The position numbers and the translations under genes are program-made. Below, piece after piece: positions 43,531 to 57,061 of a stretch of 64,000 nt of DNA. Each line of letters starts with the position of its first letter. The stretch's first letter is position 1. The notes beneath the pieces were generated by a model. The model was not told the DNA's origin and ran no database searches. It saw only the letters and a list, made by a program, of their open reading frames with translations. The stretch is from Macrostomum lignano (taxonomy: Eukaryota), in contig NIVC01000553.1 of assembly GCA_002269645.1 (NCBI GenBank), forward strand, positions 474,260-538,259. The letters are read 5' to 3'.

Positions 43531-46500
43531 CTACCTATGGTGATGCCGAGTTTTTAGCTGTAAGTCTTTTTTACCTGATTTACCAACTGACACGTGGAAC
43601 TTTATTACACTGGCATGTGCATTGAATTCATTGAATAAAAAATCTTTTCAATTAACTTGACCCTGCTAGGCCAACATTTCTTTATTCTTGAAATCTCGTC
43701 TCCCAATCCCAGTGTCTCATCTCCCAATCTCAGTGTCTCATCTCCCAATCTCAATTTCTCATCTCCCAATCTCAGTGTCTCATCTCCCAATCTCAGTGTC
43801 TCATCTCCCAATCTCAGTGTCTCATCTCCCAATCTCAATTTCTCATCTCCCAATCTCAGTGTCTCATCTCCCAATCTCAGTGTCTCATCTCCTAATATCA
43901 GTGTCTCATCTCCTAATCTCAGTATCTCATCTCCCAATCTCAGTGTCTCATCTCCTAATCTCAGTATCGCATCTCATAATCTCAGTATCGCATCTCCCAA
44001 TCTCAGTGTCTCATCTCCCAATCTCAGTGTCTCATCTCCTAATCTCAGTGTCTCATCTCCCAATCTCAGTGTCTCATCTCTCAATCTCAGTGTCTCATTT
44101 CTCAATCCCAAAATATCATTTATCACCAATCTCCTCTCGAAGTCTCCACCTAGTCTAATATTTGCATCTATTAGTAAGGTTTAGTATATATTAAATAAAA
44201 ATTTGACCACGGCCAAACCTGAAGCCCCACCCCAGAAAGTTGATCGGCTTTCAACCCGCTTGGGAGGGGGGGGGGAGTCGACGCAAAGCACAGTGCGGAC
44301 TCAGGTTTCCTCAGTAATGCTTCCTGCCTTTTAGCCAGTTCTTCAAGCCCTGTCTCGAGACATTCAAAAAGAGGCTGGCTTTGTCTTTGTAAATTTATCC
44401 GATATGAAAATTTTCTCTGCTCAAGGCTGCTCAAATCTTCTCGAAATAATCCTTTGAGTGAGCTGATAGTGCCAAGTAAGCAATCATAAGGGGATAAAAA
44501 TACACAAAATACGTAAAAAAACAGATAGATAGATAGATAGATAGATAGATAGATAGACAGATAGATAGATAGATAGATAGATAGATAGATAGATAGATAG
44601 ATAGATAGATAGATAGATAGATAGATAGATAGATAGATAGATAGATAGATAGATAGATAGATAGATAGATAGATAGATAGATAGATAGATAGATAGATAG
44701 ATAGATAGATAGATAGATAGATAAATAGATAGATAGATATACAGATTATGCATTAAATTATGAAAGAATTGAACTACTAAAATCCGAAAACATTAAGCAG
44801 GATGCAATTCAAATCGTCAGTATTTCATATATTAACGCAAATAGTTGAAGAATTCCTTGGGATCAACATAAATTAATTTTAACTGTCGCGCACAACATCA
44901 ATACTCATAGTAGCGTATACTGGATCAAAAAAGATACGTATTTAAAACAAAAAACGGTAAAATTCAAATAATGTACAGTACGAGCATAGGTGGTGACACA
45001 CTTCAAGAAACAAATACGCAATTATAACTGCCAAATTCGATTGTCAAGTTAACAAAAATAAACTTGAAATAAACATTTTTACTGTAAATTTACCAGCAAA
45101 AAAGACTGAAGGAAAGTAAGATCAGTAAGCCAACAAGATTTTGTTAATTCGACAAGACGAGACAGACCATGGACAGATTTATAAGTGGCGAATGAGCGAC
45201 AGAGCGATTCCGATTAAACAGTTAATATTTTTAACATATGCATATAAAAATTTACTATCTACAGGTTATTTGGTTGATTAAAGAAATATCGAAAGTTGCA
45301 AGGATTAGAAGATTAAATTAATGAAAAATATCATTAGCTTATTGGATTTTCTGACCTCAAAATTTTGACATGTATTACTTTCAGTAGCTACCTAAACGAG
45401 TTGCTGAAGACTCAAAACTGTCAGCGAAATGTATTATTTTAATTATTATTGAATTTCACCGGAGAACAACACAAAATTTTCGAGAAATTTTTTTAGGTGA
45501 AATGTCATATAAAAAGGCATGCATGATCAGTTGATTGGTGTCATTTAGGAATGAAAAAGCCATCATTTTAGAGTTTTTCGTTTAAAAGGGAGTAAAATTC
45601 GAACAATTAATGCAGTATATTCAAAAGTTGTATAGCTAGCTAGCGCAAAAAAAAATACATTCCGGATTTGTAAGCCAGATTATAACGAAAATTCGCGTGA
45701 TTGAAAATAATCCAAGCGCAACAAATGTATGTACACTCGTCGTGGCAATGTACATTTCAGCTATTAGTGTGGCTGCTGGGGAGGTCAGCAAGCTGTTTTT
45801 CTTTCACCAGCAAGGTGCGTGGGGGGGTAGAACAGTTGCGCCTGGAAGGCTAGATAGTGTACACATTCAGAGTACATTCAAATAAGGAAGAGTTAGGGCG
45901 GTAAGTACGAGGAAATACCGGGGGAAAATCTAAAGCTAGGAAAGCTATTTTTAGAACACTGGTAATTCTAATTAACCAAAGTGCGGCCGCAGCTCATCAA
46001 GCAGGTCGCCCGGCTGCAGTCCGGCGTGTCGCAGCGCCGGCTCAAATTCCGCGTTCAGTGAGGCGAGGTGAGCCTGAAGTCGCAAGCTCCAGTTGAACAC
46101 TTCTCGATCGAAGTACTTCTCTGTAAATCAGGATGGAGCCGGGGGTACTTAAAGTGTTAGACTAAGATGTTAAGTACTGTATGAAAATTATATGTAAGAC
46201 TTTTTATAAGTGACTCACTATCCTGATAAGATCTGAGACAGATCAACGTTTTGTGTTGTAGCGCTCTGAGCACAGTGGTAGACGAACCTGCTGACTCGGC
46301 GAGCATATCCGAGCATTCTGAAACGTTTCAAACGATGTTTAATAAATCGTTTGGGTTTTCTTAGGAACCAATGGACCTAAGGACATCGTGGGCATTAGTT
46401 ACGAACCGAATGATATTGTGCGGAGCTTCTAGGAATTGAAAGACATTGTGAGGAGTTTCTAGGAATCGAAGGACATTCTGAGGAGTTTCTAAAAATCGAA

Positions 46501-55500: not shown

Positions 55501-57061
55501 AGATAGATAGATAGATAGATAGATAGATCGATAGATAGATAGATAGATAAATAGATAGATAGATAGATAGATAGATAGATAGATAAATAGATAGATAGAT
55601 AGATAGATAGATAGATAGATAGATAGATAGATAGATAGATAGATAGATAGATAGATAGATAGATAGATAGATAGATAGATAGATAGATAGATAGATAGAT
55701 AGATAGATAGATAGATAGATCGATAGATAGATAGATAGATAGATAGATAGATAGATCGATAGATAGATAGATAGATAGATAGATAGATAGATAGATAAAT
55801 AGATAGATAGATAGATAGATAGATAGATAGATAGATAGATAGATAGATAGATAGATAGATAGATAGATAGATAGATAGATAGATAGATAGATAGATAGAT
55901 AAATAGATAGACAGACAGACAGACAGGACAGAACTCACCAGGCGGGAACATATTCAGCATGAGGCACTTCTTGTACCGGCAGTGCTGGCAGTGAGTCCTG
56001 GTCTCCTTGGTAACGTCGCAGCGGCCCACCTTGCTGCAGCTGTATTTGATCCCCAGCCCGCCCTGCATCCCGGCCCTGGTCGACCTGATGAAGAACTTCT
56101 TGCAGGCCTCGCACACGAAGGCGCCGCAGTGAAATCCGGCCGCGGTGTCGCCGCAGACGTCGCAGGCTCGACGTTCGACAGCCTTGAAGAGGCACAGCTC
56201 GCCGGGGTCGCCCGCTCCTCCTGGCGTCGCTGAGTGCTCATCTGAGCCAGACGGCTGTCTTTGATGCTGCTGCGGCAGCTGCGGTGGCGGCTGCTGCTGC
56301 CGCTGCTGAAGCTGCTGATGGTGCATTTGTTGATGGTCCGCAAACTGCTGCTGCTGATACTCATGGTAAGTCTGCTGGTGATATGCCTCGGCGGTGCTGA
56401 GGTAGATCGGTGAGCCATCCTGGTGCTGGACTTGTTGCTGCTGCTGCTGCTGCTGCTGATGATGATGATGATGATGAGGATGATTATGGAGCGTCGATGG
56501 ATGCTGCAACTGGTGTTGCTGATGCTGGTGATACTGCATGTGGCTGCTGTCAAATTGCTGCTGCTGCTGCTGCATCGCTGAGCAGTCGTTCGTCTCCGAG
56601 GTTGACGCGTTGGCGGCCACTTGCACATGACTGGCTGCGATGTACTCTGGTGGAAGATGAGGCATCGCCTGCTGCTGCTGGTGCTGCTGGAAGGCTGCAG
56701 CCGGTGCCCCGTTGCTGACCAAGGTGTAGCTGGCAAAGTACACGTGCGTCTGGGCGGGTACACCGTCGAGTCCGTGACCGCCTGACCAAGAGGGTTCTAC
56801 TGGCAAACAGCTGGGCTTCACGTCTTGCAGGAGCAGAGATGAAGGAGTCTGGCCTGGCTGCTCTGGCGGACTGTGTTGTTGTTGCTGCTGCTGCTGCTGC
56901 TGAGGATGCTGATGAGTCAGAGTGAAGTAGCTCATCTGATGTCCAATTGGGCTGATTTCCATCGACTTCTCTAGGAAACTGTCCGATGGCTGAAGCTGCT
57001 GTTGCTGTTGCTGTTGCTGTTGCTGCTGCACTGTCCGAGAGCACGCTGTTATTGTCATCAT
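43531..57061 (-). CDS. 2DBD-NR: Two-DNA-binding-domain nuclear receptor (A/B-DBD-DBD-hinge-LBD), about 856 aa
   Basis: Exons 57061-55939 (polyQ A/B region and DBD1, P-box CEACKK), 51261-51155 ([24 protein letters not shown]), 50749-50602 ([16 protein letters not shown]), 48107-47319 (SRIGRQPN; [13 protein letters not shown]), 46120-45977, 44451-44219 (PLFE, AF-2-like) and 43557-43531. Phases are consistent; the last two exons are less certain. Confidence 0.9.
43695..44105. repeat. 21-bp minisatellite (TCTCCCAATCTCAGTGTCTCA)
   Basis: Tandem copies. Confidence 0.93.
44521..44745. repeat. (GATA)n microsatellite
   Basis: Tandem GATA. Confidence 0.97.
46365..47165. repeat. 30-bp minisatellite (CTAGGAATCGAAGGACATTGTGAGGAGTTT)
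   Basis: Tandem copies in an NR intron. Confidence 0.92.
47319..48107 (-). CDS. 2DBD-NR hinge (polyQ) and LBD core exon
   Basis: Acceptor ttccttag, donor ACTG|GTGAGT; LBD signature [23 protein letters not shown] and [11 protein letters not shown]. Confidence 0.88.
48300..48935. repeat. 12-bp minisatellite (ACAGACACTAAG)
   Basis: Tandem copies. Confidence 0.93.
49750..50545. repeat. 30-bp minisatellite (GGAGGTGATGGTGCAGCACTGAAGGATCTG)
   Basis: Tandem copies after donor 50601. Confidence 0.93.
50602..51261 (-). CDS. 2DBD-NR second DBD (two exons, 51261-51155 and 50749-50602)
   Basis: CEGCK|GFF P-box split by a phase-0 intron; second finger [16 protein letters not shown]. Confidence 0.93.
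50860..51085. repeat. GA-rich simple repeat within the DBD2 intron
   Basis: GGGAGA tandem units. Confidence 0.85.
51305..52195. repeat. Composite minisatellite with ~111-bp higher-order unit built from CCCGATGTGTCTTTG-like subunits
   Basis: 37-aa periodicity in overlapping spurious ORFs. Confidence 0.88.
52905..53520. repeat. CT-rich degenerate repeat (CATCTCTCCCT)
   Basis: Low-complexity tandem units. Confidence 0.85.
54000..54900 (-). pseudogene. Possible highly degraded DNA-transposase remnant in the intron between DBD1 and DBD2
   Basis: Stop-interrupted peptides such as [17 protein letters not shown] and LSFACHH, reminiscent of hAT-like transposases. Confidence 0.25.
55072..55928. repeat. 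Long (GATA)n microsatellite directly after the DBD1 donor
   Basis: About 850 bp of tandem GATA. Confidence 0.97.
55939..57061 (-). CDS. 2DBD-NR exon: polyQ/H N-terminal region and first DBD
   Basis: [25 protein letters not shown]...[10 protein letters not shown]; donor CCTG|GTGAGT. The SIYL tail in the ORF track is intronic (GATA)n. Confidence 0.93.

What the first reader, a model, noticed from the sequence alone, without database searches (positions are those of the whole stretch)
43531..57061. Nuclear receptor with two tandem DNA-binding domains
Seen: two complete C4 zinc-finger DBDs joined by a short linker ([18 protein letters not shown]), P-boxes CEACKK then CEGCKG, followed by hinge and LBD in one phase-consistent gene. 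Established: this architecture and P-box pair define the 2DBD-NR subfamily described from Schistosoma and other flatworms and some other invertebrates, and absent from vertebrates. To my knowledge its response elements and ligands are largely unknown. The ORF track splits the gene into unrelated-looking fragments.
Basis: partly seen in the sequence, partly recalled or inferred. Interest (0 to 1): 0.8.

Follow-up and report, generated by a model that had tools for sequence, protein, structure and literature searches.

The report
Known flatworm two-DBD nuclear receptor gene

Summary
On the minus strand, six GT-AG exons (57061-55939, 51261-51155, 50749-50602, 48107-47319, 46317-46219, 46120-45972) join in phase into an 804-aa protein. 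[quoted passage not shown]

This protein is identical to GenBank PAA81052.1 (Mlig015099g4, Macrostomum lignano, assembly Mlig_3_7). A 97%-identical copy, PAA89302, is listed as Ml2DBD-NRA1 in Wu & LoVerde 2023. Every DBD and CTE feature of group 2DBD-NRA is met.

The LBD is very divergent. It has no Pfam PF00104 hit and no PDB sequence hit. A profile of 30 other 2DBD-NR LBDs does find it (31.7 bits; best of 999 shuffles 3.3). An AlphaFold model (pLDDT 79.5) matches only nuclear-receptor LBDs in the PDB.

Response elements and ligands of the family are still unknown, but this locus adds nothing new to that question. Novelty: already known. Interest: low.

The parts
55939..57061 (-). Exon 1. The ATG is at 57061-57059. 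It encodes the Q/H-rich A/B region (aa 1-299), all of DBD1 and the first linker residues (FPP plus the first base of the Gly codon). Donor CCTG|GTGAGT.
   Evidence: By my own reading, an in-frame TAG lies 45 nt upstream (57106-57104) and an AG lies 8 nt upstream of the ATG (57071-57070).
55949..56164 (-). DBD1 (aa 300-371), with P-box CEACKK at 56113-56096 and D-box SKVGR. The loop between the two zinc fingers is 21 aa.
   Evidence: Pfam zf-C4; Cys spacing. The closest solved DBDs are ERR gamma, alpha and beta (E 2.5e-16).
51155..51261 (-). Exon 2. It encodes the rest of the linker (G)[13 protein letters not shown] and zinc finger I of DBD2 up to CEGCK. Acceptor CCGCAG|, donor AAG|GTGAGT.
   Evidence: The same intron positions are found in Capitella teleta.
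50602..50749 (-). Exon 3. It encodes GFFRR and zinc finger II of DBD2 up to GMSSD(G).
50612..51220 (-). DBD2 (aa 389-456, split by the 405-bp intron 2), with P-box CEGCKG followed by FFRR and D-box SKGGG.
   Evidence: Pfam zf-C4 best stretch 388-457. The closest solved DBD is Rev-erb alpha NR1D1, 1a6y, E 2e-22, and the match includes the C-terminal extension.
47319..48107 (-). Exon 4. It encodes the C-terminal extension of DBD2 ([16 protein letters not shown], the G-box), the Q-rich hinge and LBD helices 1 to 8.
46219..46317 (-). Exon 5 (99 nt, [33 protein letters not shown]), which encodes helix 9 of the LBD. Skipping it keeps the frame.
   Evidence: It is present in the public protein. It aligns to helix 9 of the 2DBD-NR LBD profile. 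In the model it forms a helix at LBD residues 174-198 with block pLDDT 81-95.
45972..46120 (-). Exon 6. It encodes LBD helices 10-12, including the AF2-like DLLDEL (46007-45990), and ends with the TAA stop at 45974-45972.
   Evidence: The C-terminus aligns with the oyster 2DBD-NR C-terminus (LLDELRPHF with LMKELYKHF).
45975..47805 (-). Ligand-binding domain (aa 561-804), spread over exons 4 to 6.
   Evidence: Profile of 30 non-Macrostomum 2DBD-NR LBDs: 31.7 bits, E 5.5e-9, against a best shuffle of 3.3 bits. AlphaFold2 pLDDT 79.5 and pTM 0.80. The Foldseek top 50 are all nuclear-receptor LBDs.

Best explanation
**What it is.** This is one of four near-identical genomic copies (Mlig015099g4, protein PAA81052.1) of the Macrostomum lignano gene published as Ml2DBD-NRA1. 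[quoted passage not shown]

**Shown here.**
- One six-exon gene encodes A/B - DBD1 - 17-aa linker - DBD2 - G-box/CTE - hinge - LBD.
- DBD1 is most like ERR-type DBDs.
- DBD2 with its C-terminal extension is most like Rev-erb/ROR-type DBDs.
- The C-terminal domain is predicted to fold as a nuclear-receptor LBD with a terminal AF2-like helix.

**Inferred from established nuclear-receptor biology and from work on relatives.**
- Each DBD places its recognition helix (the P-box) in a major groove on a hexameric half-site.
- The RIGRQP Grip box after DBD2 reads the minor groove 5' of its half-site, as in Rev-erb.
- The short 17-aa tether forces the two half-sites bound by one polypeptide to lie close together in a fixed geometry, giving a composite element.
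- The LBD homodimerises, as shown for the Schistosoma and Echinococcus alpha members. A dimer could therefore present four DBDs.
- The LBD recruits co-regulators through the AF2 helix, possibly under control of a lipid-like ligand.

**Likely biological role.** By analogy with planarian nhr-1 (named Sme2DBD-NRA1 in the same nomenclature), the likely role is development or maintenance of reproductive organs.

**Confidence.** The value given (0.9) is for the identity and architecture of the gene. The mechanism and the biological role are inferences and are much less certain.
For: - **Gene model.** GT-AG exons join in phase. The product is identical over 804 aa to P0056 = PAA81052.1. The window maps to NIVC01000553.1 of GCA_002269645.1, and the recorded gene span of 11,090 bp equals 57061-45972.
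- **Transcript basis.** The Mlig_3_7 annotation is built from RNA-seq and transcriptome data (PMC5730564).
- **Published name.** PAA89302 (P0053, 97% identical) is listed as Ml2DBD-NRA1 (PMC10497141).
- **Group A features.** All are met.
- **Homologues.** Thirty-eight proteins from species other than M. lignano that could be parsed have the same architecture. They come from molluscs, annelids, rotifers, acanthocephalans, other flatworms and amphioxus.
- **Conserved introns.** The linker intron and the DBD2 intron share position and phase with Capitella teleta.
- **DBD affinities.** DBD2+CTE matches Rev-erb 1a6y at E 2e-22. DBD1 matches ERR gamma at 2.5e-16.
- **LBD.** The profile hit is 31.7 bits against 3.3 for the best of 999 shuffles. 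The BLASTP alignment to an oyster 2DBD-NR that carries PF00104 is collinear to the last residue (E 2e-4). The model has pLDDT 79.5, and the top 50 PDB fold matches are all NR LBDs at TM 0.6-0.7.
- **Dimerisation and function of relatives.**
Against: - Nothing here tests DNA binding, dimerisation, ligand binding or expression of this protein.
- In the only published DNA-binding test of the family, DBD1, DBD2 and the tandem did not bind AGGTCA direct, everted or palindromic repeats spaced 1-6 nt. The simple two-half-site picture may therefore be wrong.
- The LBD misses Pfam PF00104 and every PDB sequence. It matches the 20-residue LBD signature at only 5 of 9 constrained positions (my count on the sequence). 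Its AF2 core ends in Arg rather than a hydrophobic residue.
- LBD residues 99-110 are low confidence, and the model shows no beta strand.
- The structure prediction used an alignment of homologues that do carry canonical LBDs, which leans the model toward that fold.
- Shared function with planarian nhr-1 rests on the published name and tree, not on a phylogeny made here.
Confidence: 0.9

Rival explanations
1. The locus holds two neighbouring genes: a DBD-only gene in exon 1 and a conventional single-DBD receptor starting at exon 2. Prediction would have joined them wrongly.
For: A 4.7-kb repeat-filled intron separates DBD1 from DBD2. Exon 1 by itself is a long ORF with its own ATG. In copy g3 the annotated product starts inside DBD1 (P0057).
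Against: - The donor and acceptor are consensus sites and in phase.
- Exon 2 has no start codon of its own before DBD2, and it begins mid-codon.
- The public model is derived from transcripts.
- The same intron, at the same codon and phase, splits the linker in Capitella teleta.
- The same DBD-linker-DBD arrangement, mostly with linkers of 15-22 aa, occurs in 38 parsed homologues from species other than M. lignano, across several phyla.
- The g3 truncation is explained by a frameshift in that copy's exon 1.
Confidence: 0.02
2. The gene is real, but the receptor works without a ligand. On this reading the divergent C-terminal domain is only a dimerisation and co-regulator platform, constitutively active or repressive, as in many orphan receptors.
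For: - The LBD is too divergent for Pfam and for PDB sequence searches.
- phmmer against 1.84 billion representatives found no other receptor.
- The LBD signature is only partly kept.
- The H5-H7 region is low confidence and the model has no beta strand.
- No ligand is known for any 2DBD-NR. The fatty-acid proposal for the Echinococcus protein is computational.
Against: The predicted fold is a complete helical sandwich with a terminal AF2-like helix, and its best matches are lipid- and sterol-binding NR1 receptors such as LXR, EcR, RAR, FXR and PPAR. The LLDEL motif aligns with the AF2 of relatives. I did not compute a pocket volume, so this stays open.
Confidence: 0.35
3. This particular copy is a redundant or decaying duplicate in a recently polyploid genome, with the function carried by the other copies.
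For: Four copies exist (g1-g4). Copy g3 carries a frameshift in exon 1 in the assembly. The copies differ by poly-Q length and by a few substitutions.
Against: The window copy has an intact 804-aa ORF with consensus splice sites. The copies are 93-97% identical even in introns, so they are too young for divergence to show decay. The g3 frameshift could be an assembly error.
Confidence: 0.05

Closest known systems
Ml2DBD-NRA1 of Macrostomum lignano (GenBank PAA89302, Mlig015099g1; Wu & LoVerde 2023, PMC10497141)
   Same: It is the same gene family member. The window product (identical to PAA81052.1, g4) is 97% identical to it in the LBD hit. The two share exon structure, both DBDs, the linker, the G-box and the C-terminus.
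   Different: It is a different genomic copy, on contig NIVC01000553.1 rather than NIVC01000155.1. The lengths are 804 and 802 aa because of poly-Q and poly-H length changes. There are two substitutions in the LBD (C/R and A/T).
Schistosoma mansoni Sm2DBD alpha, beta and gamma, and Schmidtea mediterranea nhr-1 (Sme2DBD-NRA1)
   Same: [quoted passage not shown] The literature places the M. lignano genes with the gamma/A1 group.
   Different: I did not compare these sequences directly, because none of them was among the proteins retrieved under those names. Homodimerisation (Sm alpha) and the reproductive role (nhr-1) are shown only for those proteins. The M. lignano protein has a longer DBD1 inter-finger loop, 21 aa against 15-19 aa in 38 other 2DBD-NRs.
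Capitella teleta Ct2DBD-NRA (CAPTEDRAFT_101804) and mollusc 2DBD-NRA proteins (auto-named 'HR3' or 'ROR-like' by NCBI)
   Same: They are about 55-60% identical over the DBD1-linker-DBD2 region of the query in local alignments. Capitella has the same linker intron and DBD2 intron. The LBDs are collinear, and the oyster protein ends with the same AF2 region.
   Different: Their LBDs hit Pfam PF00104, while the M. lignano LBD does not. LBD identity is only 14-20%. Capitella also has the canonical CEACK|K intron inside DBD1, which the window gene lacks.
Rev-erb / ROR / HR3 (NR1D, NR1F) and ERR (NR3B) receptors
   Same: DBD2 plus its Grip-box extension is closest to Rev-erb alpha (1a6y, E 2e-22). 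DBD1 is closest to ERR DBDs (E 2.5e-16), and its P-box EACKK differs from ERR's EACKA by one residue. These are useful models for how each DBD may read DNA.
   Different: Those receptors have a single DBD. The window protein joins two of them by a 17-aa tether, and its pre-Grip segment is 5 residues, so there is no T-box. It is not a member of either group.

Membership tests
2DBD-NR (NR7), group A | Two tandem C4 zinc-finger DBDs and one LBD in a single polypeptide | tested here: met
   Six in-phase exons give one 804-aa product. Pfam zf-C4 matches twice. The product is identical to the transcript-based public model.
2DBD-NR (NR7), group A | Both DBDs keep the modules C-X2-C-X13-C-X2-C and C-X5-C-X9-C-X2-C | tested here: met
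   A regular-expression match finds both modules in both DBDs. The D-boxes are SKVGR and SKGGG, each C-X5-C.
2DBD-NR (NR7), group A | P-P module EACKK (DBD1) and EGCKG followed by FFRR (DBD2) | tested here: met
   CEACKK is at aa 317-322 and CEGCKGFFRR starts at aa 406.
2DBD-NR (NR7), group A | 17-22 residues between the two DBDs | tested here: met
   The linker [17 protein letters not shown] is 17 aa.
2DBD-NR (NR7), group A | G-box RXGRQ(P/S) after a 5-residue pre-Grip segment, with no T-box | tested here: met
   The sequence reads [13 protein letters not shown].
2DBD-NR (NR7), group A (ancestral type / platyhelminth A1 subgroup) | His at the fifth position after the G-box | tested here: met
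   The sequence reads [11 protein letters not shown].
2DBD-NR (NR7), group A | LBD of nuclear-receptor type | tested here: met
   Pfam PF00104 and the PDB sequence search are negative. A profile of 30 other 2DBD-NR LBDs gives 31.7 bits against 3.3 for the best shuffle. The AlphaFold model matches only NR LBDs.
2DBD-NR (NR7), group A | 20-residue LBD signature (Ti) conserved | tested here: inconclusive
   [20 protein letters not shown] fits 5 of the 9 constrained positions of the consensus quoted (my count). It aligns in register with the FAKKIPGF...DDQ..L motif of relatives.
2DBD-NR (NR7), group A | AF2-AD core: two hydrophobic residues, any residue, E/Q/R, two hydrophobic residues, at the C-terminus | tested here: inconclusive
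   LLDELR fits except for the last position (Arg). It aligns with LFKEMF and LMKELY of relatives, 5 residues from the end, and it is helical in the model.
2DBD-NR (NR7), group A, subgroup A1 (gamma) | Phylogenetic placement of DBD1+DBD2 within the A1 clade | not tested
   No tree was built here. Wu & LoVerde list PAA89302 as Ml2DBD-NRA1 and place both M. lignano genes in the A1/gamma group.
2DBD-NR (NR7) | LBD-mediated homodimer, with no heterodimer with RXR (class I behaviour) | not testable with these tools
   This is shown only for Sm2DBD alpha and Eg2DBD alpha.1.
NR1D/NR1F (Rev-erb, ROR, HR3), the names NCBI gives many homologues | Single DBD followed by the LBD | tested here: not met
   Two DBDs are present. 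Only DBD2+CTE resembles Rev-erb.

The most novel reading that the evidence does not exclude
In the Macrostomum lineage, the loop between the two zinc fingers of DBD1 has expanded. It is 21 aa here and about 37 aa in the paralogue P0058, against 15-19 aa in 38 other 2DBD-NRs. The LBD has also drifted beyond recognition by Pfam. One reading my evidence does not exclude is that DBD1 no longer reads DNA in the canonical way in this lineage. The protein would then act as a Rev-erb/ROR-like single-site binder through DBD2 and its Grip box, with DBD1 turned to another use such as a protein contact. That would make M. lignano a natural experiment on what the second DBD is for.
Probability: 0.1. Interest if true: 0.45.

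Novelty: already known. Interest (0 to 1): 0.2.

Why it matters
The 2DBD-NR family is a little-studied branch of the nuclear receptors. No response element and no ligand is known, and how two tethered DBDs (four in a homodimer) read DNA is an open question. M. lignano is a flatworm in which transgenesis and RNAi work, so this gene is a reasonable handle on that question. The gene, its architecture and its family assignment are already public, however. This window adds only details:
- exact exon coordinates for copy g4;
- conservation of the linker intron with an annelid;
- loss of the DBD1 intron;
- an unusually long DBD1 inter-finger loop;
- a structure-based confirmation of a sequence-divergent LBD.

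Tried and rejected
- **Five-exon model.** My first model lacked exon 46317-46219. It was in frame but wrong. The public protein and the LBD profile both include the 33 residues of helix 9.
- **Downstream extension.** I rejected it because the region is AT-rich, flanked by repeats, absent from the public protein, and the C-terminus of homologues aligns with ...[10 protein letters not shown].
- **Standard searches with the LBD.** Pfam, NR LBDs in the PDB by sequence, and phmmer against 1.84 billion representatives gave no receptor. The only other phmmer hit, P0054, is a 2457-aa protein of 17 tandem repeats. Its score is the sum of many weak repeat matches, so I treat it as an artefact.
- **3' UTR from a paralogous locus.** Comparing the locus with L002 to delimit the 3' UTR failed, because the copies are 93-97% identical through introns and flanks alike.
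- **A false memory.** I recalled that schistosome VF1 was a 2DBD-NR. The paper shows one DBD and an HR96-like protein, so I dropped that analogy.
- **Not done.** I did not build a phylogeny or compute a pocket volume.

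
Full report
**Observation**

The minus strand of 45972-57061 carries a split gene. The long ORF 57061-55067 starts at an ATG. It encodes a Q/H-rich N-terminus followed by a complete C4 zinc-finger DBD ([25 protein letters not shown]...[14 protein letters not shown]).

At CCTG|GTGAGT (55939) the reading frame leaves the coding sequence and runs into an (AGAT)n microsatellite. At CCGCAG|GC (51261) the frame resumes in phase 1. A second intron follows CEGCK, and the next exon (50749-50602) completes DBD2. Pfam zf-C4 matches twice (E 1.5e-43).

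Exon 4 (48107-47319) begins with the G-box RIGRQP. It carries a Q-rich hinge and most of the C-terminal domain.

**Gene model and identity**

My first model joined exon 4 directly to 46120-45972 (771 aa). An exhaustive phmmer search with the C-terminal domain returned an 802-aa protein that is 97% identical and contains 33 extra residues. These residues are encoded by a 99-nt exon at 46317-46219 with consensus splice sites.

The six-exon product is 804 aa and is identical, residue for residue, to P0056 = PAA81052.1, BOX15_Mlig015099g4 of Macrostomum lignano. The window maps to NIVC01000553.1 of assembly GCA_002269645.1. The gene span on record there is 11,090 bp, which equals 57061-45972.

The Mlig_3_7 annotation was built from RNA-seq assemblies, a de novo transcriptome and TransDecoder ORFs (PMC5730564). 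The joining of DBD1 and DBD2 therefore already rests on transcript data, although I could not inspect the reads.

Wu & LoVerde 2023 list PAA89302 (copy g1) as Ml2DBD-NRA1. The finding is therefore a correct rediscovery of a named gene.

**Family membership**

The features that Wu & LoVerde give for group 2DBD-NRA are all present:
- both zinc-finger modules in both DBDs;
- the P-P module EACKK-EGCKG, with FFRR after the second;
- a 17-aa linker (family range 17-22);
- the G-box RIGRQP after a 5-residue pre-Grip segment (SSDGS);
- His as the fifth residue after the G-box (NAVKH).

Thirty-eight parsed homologues from species other than M. lignano have the same DBD-linker-DBD layout. They come from molluscs, annelids, rotifers, acanthocephalans, other flatworms and amphioxus.

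In Capitella teleta the linker is split by an intron in the same Gly codon and the same phase (MYKPG^G against MFPPG^K). DBD2 is split after CEGCK, as here. This is independent support for descent of the whole architecture as one gene. Capitella also has the canonical intron after CEACK in DBD1. In the window DBD1 is intronless, so that intron is missing in Macrostomum.

**The LBD**

This part needed work, because standard tools do not see it.
- Negative results: there is no PF00104 hit even at E 10 and no nuclear receptor among PDB sequences at E 10. No other receptor appears among 1.84 billion representative proteins.
- Pairwise comparison: BLASTP against an oyster 2DBD-NR whose LBD does hit PF00104 gives a collinear 196-residue alignment (21% identity, E 2e-4). 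It runs from the PGF motif of helix 3 to the last residues, pairing LLDELRPHF with LMKELYKHF.
- Profile search: a profile of 30 LBDs of other 2DBD-NRs, with no Macrostomum sequence in it, scores 31.7 bits on the window's domain. The best of 999 shuffles scores 3.3 bits.
- Structure: AlphaFold2 with a 15-sequence alignment gives an all-helical domain (pLDDT 79.5, pTM 0.80, eleven helices, a terminal helix over [10 protein letters not shown]). Residues 99-110 are low confidence. Foldseek against the PDB returns only nuclear-receptor LBDs in the top 50, including LXR, EcR, RAR, FXR and PPAR, at TM 0.6-0.7.
- Caveats: the alignment used for folding consists of canonical LBDs. The 20-residue LBD signature is met at only 5 of 9 constrained positions. 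The AF2 core ends in Arg.

**Boundaries**

By my reading, an in-frame TAG lies 45 nt upstream and an AG lies 8 nt upstream. That AG could be a cis or spliced-leader acceptor, but this is inference only.

The lower boundary (43531) is not supported. The coding sequence stops at 45972. The region below it is AT-rich and holds (AGAT)n and a 21-bp minisatellite. The candidate ORFs there are absent from the public protein. The 3' UTR end remains unknown, because a paralogous locus is 93-97% identical throughout and gives no contrast.

**How it probably works**

- Shown: DBD2 with its extension is closest to Rev-erb alpha (E 2e-22, including the Grip-box region). DBD1 is closest to ERR DBDs (E 2.5e-16).
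- Inferred: each DBD reads a hexameric half-site, the Grip box reads the minor groove 5' of the DBD2 site, and the 17-aa tether fixes the spacing and orientation of the two sites.
- Inferred: LBD homodimerisation, shown for Sm2DBD alpha and Eg2DBD alpha.1, could bring four DBDs together. The AF2-like helix would recruit co-regulators.
- Against a simple picture: Wu et al. 2007 found no EMSA binding of DBD1, DBD2 or the tandem to AGGTCA repeats of any orientation spaced 1-6 nt.
- Likely role: planarian nhr-1 (Sme2DBD-NRA1) is needed for reproductive maturation. That is the best guess for the role in M. lignano.

**Novelty and score**

The gene is already known. The family question remains open (what element two tethered DBDs read, and what ligand if any binds), and M. 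lignano is a tractable animal. This locus does not change what can be tested. The small additions are:
- the exact coordinates of copy g4;
- intron conservation and intron loss;
- a DBD1 inter-finger loop of 21 aa against 15-19 aa in 38 other family members, and about 37 aa in the paralogue;
- the structural confirmation of a divergent LBD.

Interest: 0.2.

Noticed in passing
window 43000-57500: e.g. 55073-55923 (AGAT x213), 44523-44739 (AGAT x54), 48304-48933 (12-mer x53), 49762-50542 and 46403-47198 (30-mers), 51307-52196 (22/111-mer), 50865-51079 (GAGAGG x36), 52906-53473, 43694-44107, 43000-43354: Four of the five introns, and the 3' flank of the gene, carry long micro- or minisatellite arrays. 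These create long spurious ORFs (for example 54973-55938, 'SIYL' repeats) that mask the real exons in an ORF list. This fits the 15% simple and tandem repeat content reported for the genome.
   Followed up: partly
window 23702-24622 (-): An intronless 306-aa ORF with an AIG1/GIMAP-type GTPase domain (Pfam AIG1, E 4.4e-36) followed by a K/E/Q-rich coiled-coil-like tail.
   Followed up: partly
window 16797-19357 (+): Exons of a TFIIS (transcription elongation factor S-II) gene: Med26/TFIIS N-terminal domain, TFIIS_M and the Zn ribbon.
   Followed up: partly
window 10467-12691 (-): Exon fragments of an Hsp70-family gene (Pfam HSP70, E 1e-5 to 1e-6).
   Followed up: no
L003 (NIVC01000036.1, copy Mlig015099g3) about 1019-2142: In this paralogous copy, exon 1 is split between two reading frames inside DBD1 (tblastn). 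The annotated product (P0057, 471 aa) therefore starts at an internal Met ([11 protein letters not shown]...). This is either a real frameshift in one copy or an assembly indel.
   Followed up: partly
window 56095-56033 (DBD1 inter-finger loop, [21 protein letters not shown]): The spacing between Cys4 and Cys5 of DBD1 is 21 residues in the M. lignano copies, against 15-19 (mostly 16) in 38 other 2DBD-NRs. The M. lignano paralogue P0058 has about 37 residues there. The loop has expanded in this lineage, with unknown effect.
   Followed up: partly
L005 (Capitella teleta KB302909.1) 3001-4243, compared with window exon 1: Capitella has the canonical nuclear-receptor intron after CEACK in DBD1 as well as after CEGCK in DBD2. 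The window gene keeps only the DBD2 one. Matching intron positions in both DBDs of Capitella fit an origin of the second DBD by duplication of DBD exons.
   Followed up: partly
L002 (NIVC01000035.1, copy g2) against window 40000-62000: The two loci are collinear at 93-97% identity through exons, introns and flanks. They differ in repeat-array lengths and in an indel of about 2.4 kb near window 43970-44197. This is as expected for the recently duplicated M. lignano genome.
   Followed up: partly
P0054 (2457 aa): An unrelated protein of 17 near-identical repeats of about 75 aa scored E 9e-27 against LBD residues 120-179. I judge this to be a summed repeat artefact. Its origin and function are unknown.
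   Followed up: no
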